A stretch of DNA of 64,000 nucleotides from positions 1-64,000 of IMG/VR virus record IMGVR_UViG_3300038463_000730, one strand, 5' to 3'. Below, one piece after another: positions 41,930 through 56,949 of the stretch. Position numbers and translations under genes: made by a program. Under the pieces are notes generated by a model, which saw nothing but the letters and a program-made list of their open reading frames with translations, searched no databases and was not told where the DNA came from. Each line of letters begins with the position of its first letter. The stretch's first letter is position 1.

Positions 41930-42203
41930 TACCGGGTGACTTTCTCTCAATGCCACTTTTCTCGCTTCGAGTTCGGCCAATTCCATTGACTCTGGTCGTG
42001 CAGAATACATACTGACTACAGACACGACTTGAAAAGGTGGGGTATTCAACCACCAAGGACCGATGGTAGCGCTCCTTTGCGGCCGATGGCAAAGCTCTCG
42101 CTTTCGAGCCTCAGACCAGCCTATCGTCAGGTGTTTTCAACCAGTTGTAAGTTGTTGAATTCACACAGGATCTAACCGCTACTACGAGTACACGCCGGAC
42201 CTT

Positions 42204-48151: not shown

Positions 48152-48691
48152 TTGTACATACCGTACAACAATTTCTATCTGAAGAACGTCTTCATCGTAG
48201 ATAACGTGCCATACGGCGCGATGGCGTCCTACCCTGGTGATCCCGGGTTACCACGAGTCTTGGTCACGCGAAACCTTCGACAGACCAACCATCTCATTGG
48301 AGGTCCGCAGATCGAGATTCAGGACTTCGGTGACCATTTCTACATCGAACCATTCGAGATGGAATCGGAAGACCAGTTCAACAAACTGGCCCTACTCGCT
48401 ATTTGTGAAGCTCACAAACTAACACGTCAAACGGCAGATAATCACAAAGATGCCGAGTACATGCTACTGCGATGGGACATGGATATCGGTGTTTCGGTCC
48501 CGGATCCACATAATCTCAACGACTACTTTCTCTTAGCTAACAAAGAATACTTCGGCTGCGTAGCTATTCGTGACCTATCTAACTTTGACCAGCTGTACGC
48601 TCTCGCGATAGCCAATCCACGTGGCGTAGTCAAAGTGACAAACCGGTCCGTGCCAACGTGCGAATCTCATTTAGGCCCGTTGAAGTTTTAG
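48152..48691 (+). CDS. hypothetical protein
   Basis: 179 aa ORF (TTG start). Confidence 0.6.
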   Translation: MYIPYNNFYLKNVFIVDNVPYGAMASYPGDPGLPRVLVTRNLRQTNHLIGGPQIEIQDFGDHFYIEPFEMESEDQFNKLALLAICEAHKLTRQTADNHKDAEYMLLRWDMDIGVSVPDPHNLNDYFLLANKEYFGCVAIRDLSNFDQLYALAIANPRGVVKVTNRSVPTCESHLGPLKF

Positions 48692-49104
48692 TACATCACT
48701 GGATAAACTACACGCCCACCATCTAGGTCGATCGTAGTTACAGGCTTGTTCATACCGAGCATGTACTTCACCGTATTCTCGCTGCCACCCGTTCGGTCGG
48801 GCATGACCAGCGCGTACAGATGATCCGAGTCACGCGCAATCTTCTTATTCCGAGCGTAGAACCGCTTCGTTGCTTCAGAGTACGATGCAGCCTTCGGTTC
48901 CTTTGCAGGGTAATGGACCAGCATCGACACACCGAAGTAATCGGCAGCTTGCTCGGTGAAACCATCTGCCCCTTGCGGACACCCGCCCGACACCAGGACC
49001 AGTTCGTCCCCGTGCTTCGCGATCATCTCTTTCACGAGATCGAATACGAGTTGACGATCGACTGCACTGGTACGCCTTCTGCTTCCTACGATACCGATTT
49101 TCAT
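48688..49104 (-). CDS. SLOG-family (DprA/YspA-like) nucleotide-binding protein
   Basis: IGIVGSR, VSGGCPQGAD, RNKKIA, GGSENT. Confidence 0.8.
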   Translation of the reverse strand: MKIGIVGSRRRTSAVDRQLVFDLVKEMIAKHGDELVLVSGGCPQGADGFTEQAADYFGVSMLVHYPAKEPKAASYSEATKRFYARNKKIARDSDHLYALVMPDRTGGSENTVKYMLGMNKPVTTIDLDGGRVVYPVMY

Positions 49105-49277
49105 TCGTGTTCCTCTTCCTTACGTACAGGGTGTACATAGCCAGAACGTGCGACCGGCTTCTTCTCTATCGGAAAGCACTTGACCGGATGGATCGGTCTC
49201 GACTCGTTCTCCAGCTCAGTATAAGGGTAGTACAAATTTCGGTGGATAGCAAAGTCTTTCGGGTCGATCACGTTCAC
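49101..49277 (-). CDS. small hypothetical protein (not in ORF track)
   Basis: Hand-translated 58 aa; 4-nt overlaps with both neighbours. Confidence 0.5.
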   Translation of the reverse strand: MNVIDPKDFAIHRNLYYPYTELENESRPIHPVKCFPIEKKPVARSGYVHPVRKEEEHE

Positions 49278-49537
49278 TCCATAATGTGTCCGATTAGCTC
49301 GGTCTCTTCAACATCCAATCGAAATACTTCTTTGGCAAATTTGATTGCCAGCTCGTCTTTACCACTACGTACAAGTTCCTCAAGAACTTCGAGGTAGATT
49401 TTCTCGGGAGAGTATCCGATCAATTCCTGTGTATTTCCACCACAAATAGAAAGGATGAATCGATCCGCAGCCTGATTGTTACAAAACGATTTACTTTTGC
49501 CGCTGTAACCTCGGCACTTAACAGTAATGATCTTCAT
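49274..49537 (-). CDS. family C paralogue
   Basis: MKIITV...ELIGHIME-stop. Confidence 0.75.
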   Translation of the reverse strand: MKIITVKCRGYSGKSKSFCNNQAADRFILSICGGNTQELIGYSPEKIYLEVLEELVRSGKDELAIKFAKEVFRLDVEETELIGHIME

Positions 49538-49538
49538 C

Positions 49539-49802
49539 TTATTCCATCACATGTCCAGTAAGATCGGAGGCCATGATATCAACGTTCTTTTTGAAATGCC
49601 GATAAAGCGCTAGTGCAATATCGTATTGCTTTAGCTCAACCAACTTCTTGTAAGCTAGTTCAGCTGCTTGCGGCATGAAGTCGCCATAGCTAGTGAGATG
49701 GTTGTTAATAAACTTGATTGCTCGTTTCTGAGCAAGAAGTTCAGTTGAAAACGACTCAACGTTATGACACGGTTCCCCGAAAACAACTGTCCAGATTTTC
49801 AT
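49539..49802 (-). CDS. family C paralogue
   Basis: MKIWTV...DLTGHVME-stop. Confidence 0.8.
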   Translation of the reverse strand: MKIWTVVFGEPCHNVESFSTELLAQKRAIKFINNHLTSYGDFMPQAAELAYKKLVELKQYDIALALYRHFKKNVDIMASDLTGHVME

Positions 49803-50062
49803 TCGAGTGCATGCCCGGTCAAATCTGATTCGTGGATTGTTCCGACCTCTATCTCAAGGTTGGCCAACCTCAATGCCTCGCGATACTCCTCATGTTGCAT
49901 CAGAATATCAAACGTAGGTTTCAACCGCCCCATACTTGGGGCGCATGTAAGAACATGCTTCAGCGCTTCTTTCTCTGTAGCAAACGAAGTCACTCGCTTT
50001 ATCTTAGCCGAACCACTTGAGTTACTTCTATAGTCCCAAACGATAGCTGTCCAGATTTTCAT
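49799..50062 (-). CDS. family C paralogue
   Basis: MKIWTA...DLTGHALE-stop. Confidence 0.8.
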   Translation of the reverse strand: MKIWTAIVWDYRSNSSGSAKIKRVTSFATEKEALKHVLTCAPSMGRLKPTFDILMQHEEYREALRLANLEIEVGTIHESDLTGHALE

Positions 50063-50328
50063 TCCATCACATGACCGAGTAGGTCATTCTCCTTGATACT
50101 AATTCCTGAGTGTGACTTATACTTCTCATAGAACTCATAAGCCAGTTTGTATTCTTTCTCGCGGACAAGAATGTTTAGCACGAGATTGAACGGATCTTTT
50201 GGATCATACCGATAGGCGCTACGATCATTGATTAGCTCGATCAGCAGCGTTGCTACGTACTGGTAAGCCAGTTGTTCAGTCGCGTACGAGACTATCTTTG
50301 CCCTGTGCTCTATTGTCCATATCTTCAT
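50059..50328 (-). CDS. family C paralogue
   Basis: MKIWTI...DLLGHVME-stop. Confidence 0.8.
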   Translation of the reverse strand: MKIWTIEHRAKIVSYATEQLAYQYVATLLIELINDRSAYRYDPKDPFNLVLNILVREKEYKLAYEFYEKYKSHSGISIKENDLLGHVME

Positions 50329-50591
50329 TCTAGCGGATGTCCTTTCAGGACAGTGGACTCAACACAAATCTGAGCATCCTTATTGGATGAGTTAAACAAA
50401 TCCAACATGAATTTGTACTGTTCCTCGTCCTTTAAGTAATGAAGGAGCCCAAGAAGTCGCCTTGGGACATTATGGCGTCGAATCATAACTAGTTCGGCCG
50501 CTCGCTTCAGCGCAATGGCCTCGGTCGCATAAGCCTCGACTTCAGGAGAATCTTCTTCATGCTGGGAAAACACGACAGACCAAATCATCAT
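50325..50591 (-). CDS. family C paralogue
   Basis: MMIWSV...VLKGHPLE-stop. Confidence 0.8.
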   Translation of the reverse strand: MMIWSVVFSQHEEDSPEVEAYATEAIALKRAAELVMIRRHNVPRRLLGLLHYLKDEEQYKFMLDLFNSSNKDAQICVESTVLKGHPLE

Positions 50592-50602
50592 GAAACGTTG
50601 AT

Positions 50603-51034
50603 TTGACGATCGAACCGGATCTCGTCAAGTTCTCGTTAGACTGGCTGCCAATAAAATCGAATCGATATATGCTAAAAGTTTCTGTTATGCTAGACGTATG
50701 GGAAAAGATGCTCTCCAAAGCCCAGATGCCATCTGCTCAATCTGGAGACATTGAAGATGTCCTAAAATCTTCTGGGCTATTCGATGTAGCCCAGCAGGTA
50801 TCTCCATTACTGGATCAGGCTGGGGTTCCTGGAAACGCATCGGTTGAAATCGGATTAACAATAGATCGTGGTCTTAACCCGAGTTTTCCCGTTATAACAA
50901 ATCCTCCGAGCCCGACAGCCAGGGCATTATCCGGGCTGCTAAAACAGCACTTTGCGGGTCCGATCAAGAAAGCGTTAACAAACGCTAAACTGAACGTAAC
51001 GGATACGGTCAGCCTAAAATGGCTGAAGTTCTGA
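50603..51034 (+). CDS. hypothetical protein
   Basis: 143 aa ORF, start uncertain. Confidence 0.55.
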   Translation: MTIEPDLVKFSLDWLPIKSNRYMLKVSVMLDVWEKMLSKAQMPSAQSGDIEDVLKSSGLFDVAQQVSPLLDQAGVPGNASVEIGLTIDRGLNPSFPVITNPPSPTARALSGLLKQHFAGPIKKALTNAKLNVTDTVSLKWLKF

Positions 51035-51136
51035 GAGATCCAGTAGTTAACTGATCTTAACAGATCAAGATCTAATCCCTCCCCCTAATATCCCCCTCAG
51101 TGAGAGACGATATCGTCAGAGATCGATCCTGGCTAT

Positions 51137-52393
51137 TTAGTACGTGCCAGAAGAATTGATCAGTTCGTTAATCTGCTGTAAGAACTGGGCTGCCTTTGGA
51201 TTCTGGCGACCATTTCCTTCGTAGAATTTCTTCCGCCATTGAAGTGCCGGTAGATAAGTTTTGTTCCACTTGTCCTGCGACTGCTTCCGTTTCGGATCTT
51301 GACTCTGTCGAGAGTTCTGAAGGTATTGAACGAGCTTCTTTGAAGCATCGATAATGTTCTGTGCGATCTGATCGTCACTCTGTGTATTTTGTTTTGGCGC
51401 CTGAGTAGCTGCTTCACCGACGTTTTTGTTTTTGATCGCGGTAGCAACGTCCGGCATCAGCCGGATAGCTTGAATCAATGGCTCAACTTTGACAGCTTGC
51501 TCACTTAGACGTTTATCTGTATCGACTGCCTGCGGAGACTGACCGGCCTGTACGAGCTGGTTAGCGAGTTTCTCTGCATTCTGAAGGCCCAAGGCCAGGG
51601 CCGAACCAAACTGTTCTTTCGGCAACTGATTGGCTTCGTAAATAGTTTGAGCCAAATCATTTGCTGTATCGGTGATGTCTTTTTTACCAAGAACATTTGC
51701 CAAGACGCCGATCTGCTTCAGCAAATCTTTCAAGCTAACAATGTTGTTCCACTCATTCGTACCACCGGCCTCTTGCGCTTTCTTGCGCAACTTCAAATCA
51801 GCCAACTTATTGAATGTTGCGGCCAACGATGCGACGTTCGAAATAGGTTTCGAAACCGGACTCGATGGGCTTGGAGTCGGAGCCTGTTTTTGTTTTGGTG
51901 ATTGAATAACCGGTGTCGAATCAATAATTCGAACGACTTCAGGATCGGTCAAGATACCGTTGATGTACGATATGTTTACCAGAGCGTTCGGATCCTGTGC
52001 TCCGGCCGTTGCATAGTAATGCTGACGCCATTGAAGTGCCGGTAGCCACTTACGTACGAATTGATCGTAGAGTGGTTTCTGAGCTGCCGTGAGTCGGGTC
52101 GGGTCTGCGCCTTGTAGATTGGCAAGAATCTTTTTCGATTCATCGATGATGTGCTGCACAATCCGATTTTCACCCGCCGAGTCAACCGTTTTTGGAGCAA
52201 GACGATTGGTAATATTCGGATCTACCGGTCCACCGGTACCGGCCGATTCAGACGGTCCACCGCGAGTCTGCGTAGGAATGCTGTGTTCAGCTTTTTCCTG
52301 AGCGATAGTCTTGTTCGTATGCTCGTAGCCAGGCTGAATCGGTCCGCCCGTACCGGCAGCCGGAGAGACAACATCAGAACGCTGACTTAGTAC
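51137..52393 (-). CDS. Gln/Ala-rich repeat-domain protein; -1-frame continuation of 52387..53028
   Basis: Frame is open from 52435 to 51137; two PAL(Q/V)WR domains; no strong independent start. Confidence 0.7.
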   Translation of the reverse strand, partial: VLSQRSDVVSPAAGTGGPIQPGYEHTNKTIAQEKAEHSIPTQTRGGPSESAGTGGPVDPNITNRLAPKTVDSAGENRIVQHIIDESKKILANLQGADPTRLTAAQKPLYDQFVRKWLPALQWRQHYYATAGAQDPNALVNISYINGILTDPEVVRIIDSTPVIQSPKQKQAPTPSPSSPVSKPISNVASLAATFNKLADLKLRKKAQEAGGTNEWNNIVSLKDLLKQIGVLANVLGKKDITDTANDLAQTIYEANQLPKEQFGSALALGLQNAEKLANQLVQAGQSPQAVDTDKRLSEQAVKVEPLIQAIRLMPDVATAIKNKNVGEAATQAPKQNTQSDDQIAQNIIDASKKLVQYLQNSRQSQDPKRKQSQDKWNKTYLPALQWRKKFYEGNGRQNPKAAQFLQQINELINSSGTY

Positions 52394-53028
52394 TTTTTTT
52401 TTACGTTGAGTCTTCCAGCTTTTTGCTGAGCTGCTTCACCCGTATTTGTCGGTGGCGCTGCGGGACCAGGCTTTGGTGCCGTGCCGTTCGGCATCGGAGC
52501 CGGTGTACCAGATCCCATATTCTTGTAACCATTGGTGATGGTGTAGAAAGTCTTGTCATCAGCCATGATGCCGTTAATTTCAGACATCAACAGAATCGCG
52601 TCCTGATCGTTCAATCCGGCCGCACCCTTAGCAAGCCAGTTACGACGCCAAACGAGAGCTGGATATAATTTCTTCATGAACTCATCAATCTGTTTACGCT
52701 GAGCATCCGTGACGCTCTGCATATTGATGCCGCTCAAGCTAGCCAAGATACTCTTAGACTGGCTGATGATGTTCTCGGTGATCTGTTTCTCACGAGCCCA
52801 ATCTTGTTTTGGCTGTGGCTTCGCTTCACCCGTGCCAGGTTCGGCGTGACCAGATGGTGTTGGTCGGAAACCAGAATCAATATTTACATTGGTCGGGTCA
52901 ATAGACTGTGCCGCGACCGGGTCAGTTGGGGTTGCATTTGGTTCAGCAGGCGTTTGCTGTGCCAGAACCCGACGCAAACGTTGCTCGGCCATTTTTTCAA
53001 ACACGTTAGCTTTTTCAAGAATTTTCAT
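52387..53028 (-). CDS. repeat-domain protein, N-terminal part
   Basis: 213 aa; NIISQSK...LYPALVWRR domain. Confidence 0.8.
   Translation of the reverse strand: MKILEKANVFEKMAEQRLRRVLAQQTPAEPNATPTDPVAAQSIDPTNVNIDSGFRPTPSGHAEPGTGEAKPQPKQDWAREKQITENIISQSKSILASLSGINMQSVTDAQRKQIDEFMKKLYPALVWRRNWLAKGAAGLNDQDAILLMSEINGIMADDKTFYTITNGYKNMGSGTPAPMPNGTAPKPGPAAPPTNTGEAAQQKAGRLNVKKKY
52393..52402 (-). other. slippery site A_AAA_AAG (A9G run), candidate -1 frameshift
   Basis: GTA AAA AAA AAG TAC TAA in frame 0; -1 frame continues V-L-S-Q-R... Confidence 0.65.
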
Positions 53029-54973: not shown

Positions 54974-55615
54974 ATGTCAGACATTGAATTCTATATTCTC
55001 GACACTGAAACGAACGGACTTAGAGTAAACTATCACGAGTTGACACAAATCTGTGTCATTCGACGACGTGATCGAATGCGTTATGATTGCACGATTCGTG
55101 CGTTATTCCCCCAGCGTTCGGAGCCGATGGCGCTAAGGATCACAGGTAAAACGCATGACGACCTCCGCAAAGGTGTCGAGCAGATCGAAGCAGTCGATAC
55201 CTTCGAAAAGTTTCTAGCAACGGATGGTTCGAAACCCTCACACCGATGCATCGTCGCTCATAACCGATCATTCGATCAACGCTTCATGCATGCACTATGG
55301 ATTCAACATAAACGGGATTTTCCAGCGGATTTGTGGGTCGATACGATTCCAATGTTCAAATCGTGGGCAAAGAAACAAGGGATGGTTAAACCATCGGCCA
55401 AGCTAGAAGCCGTAGCGGCAGCGATCGGAGCACGTAAGGTTCCGGGCCTGCACAATGCTGTTGATGATTCGAAGAACCTTTACTTCATCTTTCAAAAACT
55501 AGAAGAGCTTGGCGAAGATTTTTTGAGCTTTGCAAAACTGATCCCTTGTCGTTCATCCATCTCTAAAGGAGATGAGGAGAACGATCTGATGAAAGAAGCT
55601 GCCGAGGATGAATAA
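54974..55615 (+). CDS. DEDDh 3'-5' exonuclease (Pol III epsilon-like)
   Basis: LDTETNG, VAHNRSFD, WVDT, HNAVDD. Confidence 0.9.
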   Translation: MSDIEFYILDTETNGLRVNYHELTQICVIRRRDRMRYDCTIRALFPQRSEPMALRITGKTHDDLRKGVEQIEAVDTFEKFLATDGSKPSHRCIVAHNRSFDQRFMHALWIQHKRDFPADLWVDTIPMFKSWAKKQGMVKPSAKLEAVAAAIGARKVPGLHNAVDDSKNLYFIFQKLEELGEDFLSFAKLIPCRSSISKGDEENDLMKEAAEDE

Positions 55616-56724: not shown

Positions 56725-56949
56725 ATGGTTTCGAACAAGCGTGATCGATTGGAATTTGAAGGCGAAGTGGTTGAGGAGAACAAGGGCAAATTCCTTGTGA
56801 AGGTTACGGAGACCCACTCCGTGCGTTGCACTCTGGCCGGGAAGGTCCGTCAGAATCAGGTGCATATCCTACCCGGTGACAAAGTAAAGATTGAAGTTAG
56901 TCTTTACGATACGACTCAGGGTCGTATCACGTTCCGTATGAAGAAGTAA
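56725..56949 (+). CDS. infA: translation initiation factor IF-1
   Basis: LEFEGEVVE...F.V...CTLAGKVRQN.VHILPGDKVKIEVS.YD...GRITFR. Confidence 0.92.
   Translation: MVSNKRDRLEFEGEVVEENKGKFLVKVTETHSVRCTLAGKVRQNQVHILPGDKVKIEVSLYDTTQGRITFRMKK

What the first reader, a model, noticed from the sequence alone, without database searches (positions are those of the whole stretch)
49274..50591. Third tandem paralogue array: five 87-89 aa proteins, MKIWT...GHxME
Seen: five adjacent minus-strand ORFs of nearly identical length. They have conserved ends (M-K/M-I-W/I-T/S at the start; L-x-G-H-x-M/L-E-stop at the end), a common (S/A)(F/Y)(A/S)TE..A motif in four copies, and divergent middles. The array sits next to a SLOG-family gene. 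Inference: the same constant-ends/variable-middle logic as family A but with a different, acidic C-terminal tag, which suggests a second addressing channel.
Basis: partly seen in the sequence, partly recalled or inferred. Interest (0 to 1): 0.6.

Follow-up and report, generated by a model that had tools for sequence, protein, structure and literature searches.

The report
Small phage protein family beside SLOG gene
Five neighbouring genes in a 434-kb peat phage encode diverged copies of one new ~87-residue protein of unknown function, always found just upstream of a small DprA-like (SLOG) gene; the shared ends belong to the protein itself and are not a genome-wide address label.

Summary
Five tightly coupled minus-strand ORFs (88, 89, 87, 87 and 87 aa; 49274-50591) are true paralogues. 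Each is retrieved by an HMM of the other four (E 9e-6 to 1e-16); the best unrelated ORF scores E >= 0.085.

They form a very small, undescribed family with no Pfam, PHROG or NCBIfam match and no significant PDB fold match. A search of 1.8 billion proteins found members in only four other phage lineages. These carry 1, 1, 3 and 5 copies. Wherever DNA could be read, the copies lie directly upstream of an orthologous minimal DprA/YAcAr-type SLOG gene.

AlphaFold models of two paralogues (pLDDT 85 and 80) give the same topology: beta-beta-alpha-alpha-alpha-beta. MKIW(T/S)V is the first core strand. L-x-G-H-x-(M/L)-E-stop is a fixed-length tail after the last strand.

The GHxME-stop motif occurs nowhere else in the 434-kb genome, so a wider "addressing channel" is not supported. 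Synonymous codons vary at the conserved residues, so the constraint acts on the protein.

Best reading, inferred: these are tandemly expanded binding modules that share one conserved pole and differ elsewhere. They probably work with the co-translated SLOG protein in host takeover or counter-defence. The complex prediction gave no verdict and function remains untested. Interest is moderate.

The parts
50325..50591 (-). Copy 1 (W1), 88 aa, MMIWSV...KGHPLE-stop. First gene of the array; positional orthologues are R1 in L006 and S1 in L053.
50059..50328 (-). Copy 2 (W2), 89 aa, MKIWTI...LGHVME-stop. Its start overlaps the copy 1 stop (ATGA).
   Evidence: 55% identical to its L006 orthologue, dN 0.29, dS saturated
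49799..50062 (-). Copy 3 (W3), 87 aa, MKIWTA...TGHALE-stop. Has a longer beta1-beta2 loop and no counterpart in L006.
49539..49802 (-). Copy 4 (W4, P0001), 87 aa, MKIWTV...TGHVME-stop. Modelled at pLDDT 85: b1 2-8, b2 14-18, a1 21-35, a2 45-56, a3 60-70, b3 74-80, tail 81-87.
   Evidence: 61% identical to its L006 orthologue
49274..49537 (-). Copy 5 (W5, P0003), 87 aa, MKIITV...IGHIME-stop. The most divergent copy: it lacks W4 and the ATE motif, but the model has the same topology (pLDDT 80).
   Evidence: (leave-one-out E 9e-6; not found by middles-only profiles)
49101..49277 (-). 58-aa ORF (GTG start, GTGA overlap with copy 5). It is conserved in L053 (51 aa) and absent from L006 and L054. 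It is not a family member.
48688..49104 (-). 138-aa minimal DprA/YAcAr-type SLOG (Rossmann-only) protein. It is the last gene of the coupled operon and is single-copy in the genome.
50592..51136 (.). 545-nt stretch upstream of the array with no conserved gene and no degenerate sixth copy. It is the presumed promoter/leader region of the operon. A terminator-like hairpin for the upstream gene lies at 50986-50971 (-).

Best explanation
SHOWN.
- The five ORFs are real, purifying-selected paralogues of one previously undescribed ~87-residue alpha/beta domain: b1-b2-a1-a2-a3-b3 plus a 7-residue C-terminal tail.
- The family is confined to a small lineage of huge tailed phages (peat is on record only for the window's own phage).
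- It is present in 1, 1, 3 or 5 copies. In the four lineages whose DNA could be read (L006, L053, L054 group and the window), it lies directly upstream of, and translationally coupled to, an orthologous minimal DprA/YAcAr-type SLOG gene.
- The conserved ends are parts of the protein. MKIW(T/S)V is core strand b1. L-x-G-H-x-(M/L)-E-COOH is a fixed-length tail after b3.
- The constraint on them acts at the protein level.

INFERRED.
- With a b1-b2 hairpin, three helices and then b3, the last strand should run antiparallel to b1. The tail would then emerge next to the N-terminus, and W4, L81, G83, H84, E87 and the terminal carboxylate would form one conserved pole.
- The array grew by tandem duplication (1 to 3 to 5 copies), followed by long divergence.
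- The copies are binding modules that use the shared pole for one common partner or ligand and present different loop and helix surfaces.
- The most likely common partner is the co-translated SLOG protein. Published comparative work predicts phage SLOG proteins of this kind to sense or degrade ADP-ribose-derived immune signals, or to bind ssDNA.
- The operon would therefore act in early host takeover or counter-defence.
For: - Real genes and paralogy.
- Purifying selection: orthologue dN 0.29-0.56 with dS saturated.
- Family size and membership.
- Same layout in relatives. L006 has 3 copies then SLOG. L053 has 5 copies, a 51-aa ORF, then SLOG. L054-L056 have 1 copy then a SLOG that is 54% identical, with a 4-bp overlap. 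The P0011 contigs have 1 copy then a 126-aa gene with a 4-bp overlap.
- Two concordant AlphaFold models. The ESM Atlas also holds a confident model.
- The motif is absent elsewhere in the genome.
- Protein-level constraint: Leu uses 5 codons, Gly 4, His 2, Glu 2; all three stop codons occur; stop/start spacing varies from -4 to +5.
- Indels fall only in loops.
- SLOG classification and its predicted roles in phages; PMC9503650; PMC7824862.
Against: - No direct evidence of binding. The complex prediction gave no verdict.
- All loci carrying the pair are syntenic relatives of one phage lineage. The conserved adjacency may therefore be inherited gene order rather than selected linkage.
- None of 126 more distant phage SLOG loci (<= 47% identity) has a family member or a conserved small upstream gene. 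Such SLOG proteins therefore do not generally need this partner.
- In the window and in L053, an unrelated small ORF separates the array from the SLOG gene.
- The spatial proximity of the two termini was deduced from topology.
- There is no expression evidence.
Confidence: 0.45

Rival explanations
1. Independent accessory proteins. The copies are stand-alone host-takeover or anti-defence binders, of the kind exemplified by small phage inhibitors. They diversified by tandem duplication under an arms race. They sit next to the SLOG gene only because gene order is inherited in this phage lineage, and they share transcription but not a complex. The conserved pole would bind a host target or mediate self-association.
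For: All carriers are syntenic relatives. SLOG genes elsewhere lack such a partner. Copy number varies from 1 to 5. The copies diverge at the same rate as neighbouring accessory genes (41-47% vs 45-57% identity), while the SLOG protein stays at 81%. Weak recurrent structural resemblance to AcrIIC5 (Z 3.6-3.8) and to ERH adaptors (Z 3.0-3.7) appears in both models.
Against: The 4-bp coupling to SLOG, or to the ORF before it, persists down to relatives whose SLOG is only 54% identical, and synteny breaks immediately downstream there. The structural matches are below the tool's stated noise level. The proteins are near neutral, not DNA mimics.
Confidence: 0.3
2. The conserved termini are sorting or address signals (for example for packaging into the virion or delivery to a compartment) attached to variable cargo.
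For: The tail is sequence-invariant, has a fixed length and low model confidence (pLDDT 60-65), as expected for an exposed linear motif.
Against: No other ORF in 434 kb carries either motif. The N-terminal motif is a buried-type core strand in both models. The 'cargo' middles are homologous and fold alike. The genes lie among small accessory genes, not structural genes. The large structural and replication genes tested lie at about 94-327 kb.
Confidence: 0.06
3. A small enzyme or metal/ligand-binding protein. The invariant His together with the terminal Glu/carboxylate and Trp4 would form a catalytic or metal site. The copies would act on variants of a small molecule related to the SLOG protein's nucleotide ligand.
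For: The invariant G-H and near-invariant terminal E sit at a fixed distance from the C-terminus in all 15 members. The family is associated with a nucleotide-binding-type domain.
Against: There is only one invariant polar side chain, no match to any enzyme fold or family, and the tail is modelled as disordered.
Confidence: 0.1
4. Not separate folded proteins. The array would be a set of RiPP-like precursors (leader / variable core / follower), or a polyprotein read through the junctions and cleaved at ...GHxME|MKIW...
For: The conserved sequence on both sides of each junction superficially resembles a processing site.
Against: Every junction has a stop codon. Stop type, frame offset and spacing vary. 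Each unit is confidently modelled as a compact domain. Single-copy members have the same ends. No maturation enzyme was detected among the neighbours.
Confidence: 0.02

Closest known systems
Tandem paralogue expansions of small accessory genes in large DNA viruses and jumbo phages ('accordion'-type gene family growth; from my own knowledge of the literature)
   Same: Head-to-tail copies on one strand. Copy number differs between related genomes (1, 3, 5). The genes lie in an accessory-gene region, where the neighbouring 213-aa and 340-aa genes have also duplicated.
   Different: The copies are old and diverged (17-30% identity in the multiple alignment; 29-42% pairwise). BLAST at E < 1e-5 does not even cluster them. 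Three copies pre-date the split from L006. This is a stable multi-paralogue set, not a recent amplification.
ERH (enhancer of rudimentary homologue) small dimeric adaptor fold
   Same: Similar size. A strand starts at residue 2, followed by a hairpin, helices on one face and a C-terminal strand. It is the only whole-domain PDB match that recurs for both paralogue models (Erh1 6s2w Z 3.6/3.7; ERH-2 7o6l Z 3.4/3.0; Foldseek TM 0.40).
   Different: All scores are below the tool's noise level (typical best Z 7-8). There is no Pfam or other sequence match. ERH is eukaryotic, and has (from memory) four strands and no GHxME tail. This is a lead only.
Small phage anti-defence proteins (e.g. AcrIIC5, PDB 8f3k)
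   Same: Small, phage-encoded alpha+beta proteins, clustered with other accessory genes. A weak match recurs in both models (Z 3.8 and 3.6, 64 residues aligned).
   Different: Sub-noise Z. These proteins are near neutral (pI 5.4-8.0), whereas AcrIIC5 is described as a DNA mimic. There is no link to CRISPR here.
Two-gene modules with a DprA-like protein, such as the ShosTA defence pair (PDB 9vzo 'DprA-like antitoxin protein ShosA')
   Same: A small gene overlaps a DprA-like Rossmann gene in one operon. The SLOG profile matches ShosA at E 2.9e-4.
   Different: From my own knowledge, ShosA's partner is a phosphoribosyltransferase-type toxin, which is unrelated to this family. Here the DprA-like protein is Rossmann-only (138 aa) and phage-encoded. 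Toxicity was not tested.
Pfam DUF7336 and other uncharacterised small phage proteins (BFVD A0A6J5RSZ1)
   Same: Nearest neighbours by language-model features (0.78) and by shape (TM 0.5-0.75) are uncharacterised small phage proteins.
   Different: The DUF7336 HMM finds nothing in this genome even at E <= 10, and the Pfam scan found no match. None of these neighbours has a known function.

Membership tests
The new MKIW...GHxME family itself (all five window copies) | Full-length profile match, b-b-a-a-a-b topology, MxIW start, L-x-G-H-x-x-E-stop end | tested here: met
   Leave-one-out E 9e-6 to 1e-16. Two models share the topology. Copy 5 lacks W4 and is not found by middles-only profiles, so it is the weakest member.
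Pfam DUF7336 (PF24024) | HMM match at or near the gathering score | tested here: not met
   No match in the genome at E <= 10 and none in the Pfam scan at E <= 1.
ERH family | Sequence-profile match, or a structural match clearly above background | tested here: not met
   No Pfam hit. Z 3.0-3.7 and TM 0.40 are below the noise level.
Anti-CRISPR AcrIIC5-like DNA mimics | Strongly acidic surface and a significant fold match | tested here: not met
   pI 5.4-8.0, net charge +1 to -4. Z 3.6-3.8.
Shared targeting tag (address signal carried by unrelated proteins) | The same terminal motif on several non-homologous proteins of the genome | tested here: not met
   GHx[MLIV]E-stop and M[KM]I[WI][TS] occur only in the five paralogues among 3350 ORFs >= 40 aa. 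One further stop-to-stop frame hit is not an ORF.
RiPP precursor array | Conserved leader, hypervariable unstructured core, adjacent maturation enzymes | tested here: not met
   Each unit is a confident compact fold. The middles are homologous. The neighbours have no recognised maturation-enzyme domains.
Type II toxin-antitoxin-like pair (small protein + SLOG) | Physical neutralising complex; toxicity of one partner | not testable with these tools
   Only the gene arrangement (4-bp overlaps) is seen. The complex prediction gave no verdict.
SLOG superfamily, DprA / YAcAr / cpYpsA families (for the neighbouring 138-aa gene) | Rossmannoid core with a Gly-rich loop after strand 1 and the SGG...G.D and R-N...S/T-G-G/S motifs; Pfam gathering score | tested here: inconclusive
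   The superfamily level is met: the profile matches solved DprA at E 1.2e-7 over the whole length, and G7, S8, S39, G40, G45, D47, R85, N86 and G107 are invariant. Every single Pfam family is below its cut-off: DprA 21.7 vs 29.6, cpYpsA 20.2 vs 26.2, YAcAr 26.3 vs 28.2 in the L053 orthologue.

The most novel reading that the evidence does not exclude
One enzyme, many adaptors. The five paralogues would be interchangeable specificity subunits. Each would dock through the invariant N-terminus/C-tail pole onto the single minimal SLOG protein, retargeting it to different host immune nucleotides or nucleic-acid substrates. That would make a combinatorial phage counter-defence module that grew from a 1:1 pair to a 5:1 set.
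Probability: 0.12. Interest if true: 0.65.

Novelty: new member of a known kind. Interest (0 to 1): 0.38.

Why it matters
Huge phages carry hundreds of small genes of unknown function, and most cannot be grouped at all. Here a cleanly defined new domain family has three useful properties:
- an unusual conservation pattern, with both termini conserved and a tail of fixed length;
- a consistent genomic partner, a minimal SLOG/DprA-like protein;
- a natural copy-number series (1, 3, 5).

Together these give a concrete, testable handle on what phage SLOG proteins do. Published work so far offers only predictions: degrading or sensing ADP-ribose-type immune signals, or binding ssDNA. If the small proteins prove to be SLOG adaptors or inhibitors, that would add a new layer to phage counter-defence. 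If they do not, this remains a well-documented ORFan family. The result also removes the more exotic 'address tag' reading.

Tried and rejected
- Complex prediction of SLOG with copy 4, using my own alignments: ipSAE 0.00 in both runs, controls not run. The tool's verdict is 'no answer', so this counts neither for nor against binding.
- DUF7336 and T4 Y07C leads from the Atlas feature search (0.78): DUF7336 has no HMM match in the genome. Y07C was not pursued beyond the negative Pfam scan.
- blastn of 48-52 kb against 50,697 phage records: no match.
- Classical dN/dS: synonymous sites are saturated, so only 'dN well below a saturated dS' can be stated.
- Accelerated evolution of the array: rejected. 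The copies diverge like their non-SLOG neighbours.
- RBS or DNA-level explanation of the conserved C-terminus: rejected by codon, stop and spacing variation.
- Mobile two-gene module: rejected. The carriers are syntenic relatives.
- Marginal long hits of the big search (P0013, P0015-P0017; E 2-4e-4): three of them (P0013, P0015, P0017) are TPR-repeat or multi-GAF histidine-kinase proteins that match only parts of the helical region through summed repeats. P0016 has no Pfam family. None carries a SLOG domain, so there is no Rosetta-stone fusion.
- Degenerate sixth copy in the 545-nt gap upstream: none.
- Strain variation and expression: contigs of other peat runs are identical low-coverage fragments, and the one metatranscriptome held nothing.
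- Family tree: too poorly resolved (no starred branch) to order the duplications.
- Literature search on tandem paralogues in jumbo phages: nothing relevant.
Full report
**What is there.** The window is the first 64 kb of a 434,688-bp IMG/VR virus record. The record is a huge tailed phage: it encodes a DNA polymerase, tail sheath, head maturation protease, ribonucleotide reductase, SbcC and an NAD-dependent ligase. The stretch occurs in peat metagenomes from several studies.

On the minus strand, 49274-50591 holds five ORFs of 88, 89, 87, 87 and 87 aa. Three of the four junctions within the array are 4-bp ATGA overlaps and one is a 1-nt spacer. The fifth copy overlaps (GTGA) a 58-aa ORF, which in turn overlaps (ATGA) a 138-aa SLOG-type gene at 48688-49104. 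The seven genes therefore form one tightly coupled operon. It converges on the plus-strand gene at 48152-48691.

**Is it more than chance?** Yes.
- The five proteins align over their full length, with M1, I3, A, L, L, G, H and E invariant.
- An HMM built from any four copies retrieves the fifth from all 1864 ORFs of the genome at E 9e-6 to 1e-16. The best unrelated ORF never scores better than E 0.085.
- The copies are very diverged: 17-30% identity in the multiple alignment and 29-42% in pairwise alignments. An all-against-all BLAST at E < 1e-5 does not link them.
- The middles are not unrelated. A profile built only from the middles of members from other phages finds copies 1-4 at E <= 5e-6. 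Copy 5 is the exception and depends on its ends and full-length match.

**The family.**
- Pfam, PHROGs and NCBIfam give no match.
- The word-indexed search of 5.8 billion proteins found only the window's own proteins plus members from L006, L053 and the P0011 contigs.
- The exhaustive profile search of 1.84 billion representatives found 16 proteins at E <= 1e-3. Five are the window's own, seven are true members, and four are long-protein hits that are not members (three carry TPR or GAF repeats, one has no Pfam family).
- Fifteen distinct members are known in total.

The members lie in four further places:
- L006, a 10-kb Logan contig, has three copies (orthologues of copies 1, 2 and 4) followed directly by the SLOG gene.
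- L053, a 3.8-kb contig, has five copies, a 51-aa ORF homologous to the window's 58-aa ORF, then the SLOG gene.
- L054-L056, contigs of up to 134 kb, have a single 139-aa copy with a Gly/Ser-rich insertion. It overlaps by 4 bp a 126-aa SLOG protein that is 54% identical to the window's (E 6e-48).
- Two ENA contigs have a single copy (P0011) overlapping a 126-aa gene by 4 bp. Their DNA could not be fetched.

Orthologue pairs show dN 0.29-0.56 with synonymous sites saturated, so the genes are under purifying selection.

**The conserved ends.** Across all 15 members the invariant columns are M1, L81, G83 and H84. I3, W4 and E87 are nearly invariant. Secondary conservation is found at S17-F18-A19-T20, A24, K26, L54 and I76. 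Insertions occur only between b1 and b2, between a1 and a2, and before b3.

AlphaFold models of copy 4 (pLDDT 85, pTM 0.74) and of the most divergent copy 5 (pLDDT 80) share one topology. b1 spans residues 2-8, b2 14-18, followed by three main helices, b3 at 74-80, and a 7-residue tail without secondary structure at pLDDT 60-65. The ESM Atlas also holds a fairly confident model of copy 4.

The N-terminal motif is therefore the first core strand. The C-terminal motif is a tail whose length is identical in every member.

The constraint acts on the protein. At the conserved positions Leu uses five codons, Gly four, His two and Glu two. All three stop codons occur, and the distance to the next start varies from -4 to +5. 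This excludes an embedded ribosome-binding site or a recombination sequence as the cause.

From the topology (hairpin, three helices, last strand) I infer that b3 runs antiparallel to b1. The tail and the N-terminus would then lie at the same pole. I could not measure this, because model coordinates are not exposed.

**Is it a wider tag?** No. Among 3350 ORFs of 40 aa or more in the whole genome, GHx[MLIV]E-stop and M[KM]I[WI][TS]- occur only in these five. The only other stop-to-stop occurrence is not an ORF. The family profile finds exactly five places in the genome. There is no decayed sixth copy upstream.

**Fold comparisons.**
- Foldseek against the PDB gives nothing at E <= 1e-3.
- Exhaustive VIA-align gives best Z 5.2 for copy 4 and 3.8 for copy 5. 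The tool states a noise level of about 7-8.
- The only whole-domain matches that recur in both models are ERH-family adaptors (Z 3.0-3.7) and AcrIIC5 (Z 3.6-3.8). I treat these as leads only.
- The nearest predicted structures are uncharacterised small phage proteins: BFVD A0A6J5RSZ1 (TMq 0.75, E 9e-3) and Atlas entries at TM about 0.6.
- DUF7336 surfaced weakly in three searches but fails a direct HMM test.

**The partner gene.** The 138-aa protein is a Rossmann-only SLOG protein.
- Its profile matches solved DprA structures over the full length (E 1.2e-7), and more weakly the DprA-like antitoxin ShosA.
- Individual Pfam families (DprA, cpYpsA, YAcAr) all fall just below their cut-offs.
- It is single-copy in the genome.
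- Similar SLOG genes are common in phages. However, none of 46 viral and 80 metagenomic loci with SLOG proteins at <= 47% identity has a family member or any conserved small upstream gene.
- The small family is therefore tied to one narrow SLOG subclade (>= 54% identity).
- All carriers of the pair are syntenic relatives of the window's phage. The conserved adjacency is therefore only moderate evidence of functional linkage. What speaks for linkage is the retained translational coupling in the most distant relative, where synteny ends right after the SLOG gene.
- Published comparative work predicts that viral SLOG domains sense or degrade ADP-ribose-derived immune signals, or act as extra ssDNA-binding proteins in the DprA case (PMC9503650; PMC7824862). 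Neither paper's SLOG passages, as I read them, describe a small partner.

**Evolution.** Positional orthology (copy 1 with R1 and S1; copy 2 with R2 and S2; copy 4 with R4) shows that at least three paralogues pre-date the divergence of these phages. The tree is too weak to order the other duplications. Against L053, the small proteins are 41-47% identical, much like the neighbouring 179-aa (45%) and 58-aa (57%) genes, whereas the SLOG protein is 81% identical. The array evolves at the ordinary pace of accessory genes and is not exceptionally fast.

**Interpretation.** The best-supported account is a lineage-specific small domain family expanded by tandem duplication. Its members keep one conserved pole (N-terminal strand plus C-terminal tail) and diversify elsewhere. 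That is what one expects of binding modules with a common partner and different second specificities.

The co-translated SLOG protein is the most economical candidate partner. I put about 0.3 on that specific step and 0.45 on the account as a whole. The complex prediction returned no verdict. No RNA or strain-variation evidence was obtained.

The main rival is that these are independent accessory or anti-defence binders linked to SLOG only by inherited gene order (0.3). The address-tag reading is unlikely (0.06). An enzyme or metal-site reading (0.1) and precursor or polyprotein readings (0.02) are less likely still.

**Verdict.** The 'constant ends, variable middle' description is right, but the 'addressing channel' inference is not supported. 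The family is new to the databases, but the phenomenon is familiar: a tandemly expanded small ORFan family in a huge phage. Interest is moderate. No step needed referral.

Noticed in passing
window 51137-52159 (-) and 52387-53028 (-): The adjacent 340-aa and 213-aa proteins are paralogues that share an ~80-residue module (…LPALQWR… / …YPALVWRR…). The module occurs twice in the 340-aa protein (E 3e-15 and 2e-8). The relative L053 has only the 213-aa type. This is another tandem or internal duplication right beside the array, with no Pfam match.
   Followed up: partly
window 1-24000 versus 24001-64000: G+C falls from 0.51-0.59 to 0.44-0.51 at about 24 kb. IMG/VR labels the record 'provirus', and the same proteins are recorded on a 502,994-bp contig. 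The boundary and the nature of the first 24 kb were not examined.
   Followed up: no
window 56725-56949 (+): A 74-aa phage-encoded IF-1/eIF-1A-like translation initiation factor (Pfam PF01176, E 4e-13, above the cut-off). It is conserved at 60% identity in the distant relative L054.
   Followed up: partly
window 54974-55615 (+); genome 67461-68111 (-): An RNase T/DEDD-type exonuclease (PF00929, E 1e-13) with a diverged second copy about 12 kb away in the genome.
   Followed up: partly
window 49101-49277 (-): A 58-aa ORF is wedged between the array and the SLOG gene. It is conserved in L053 (68% over 41 aa) but absent from L006 and L054. It has no family match, and its role in the operon is unknown.
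   Followed up: partly
window 50592-51136: A 545-nt stretch upstream of the array has no gene conserved in relatives. The plus-strand ORF 50603-51034 (TTG start, 143 aa) has no homologue in L006, L053 or L054. No sigma-70-like promoter lies there. The three promoter-like hits all lie inside the array and number fewer than expected by chance.
   Followed up: partly
L054:5001-5420 (P0014): The single-copy relative carries a Gly/Ser/Thr-rich low-complexity insertion of about 50 residues exactly in the b1-b2 loop. The same loop is lengthened in window copy 3.
   Followed up: no
genome-wide (G000): BLAST clustering found 23 paralogue families in the 434-kb genome. They include dispersed families of 4-5 members, for example at 42203, 299087, 310596, 311309 and 432519. 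Very diverged arrays like the one studied here escape this clustering, so the true number is higher.
   Followed up: no
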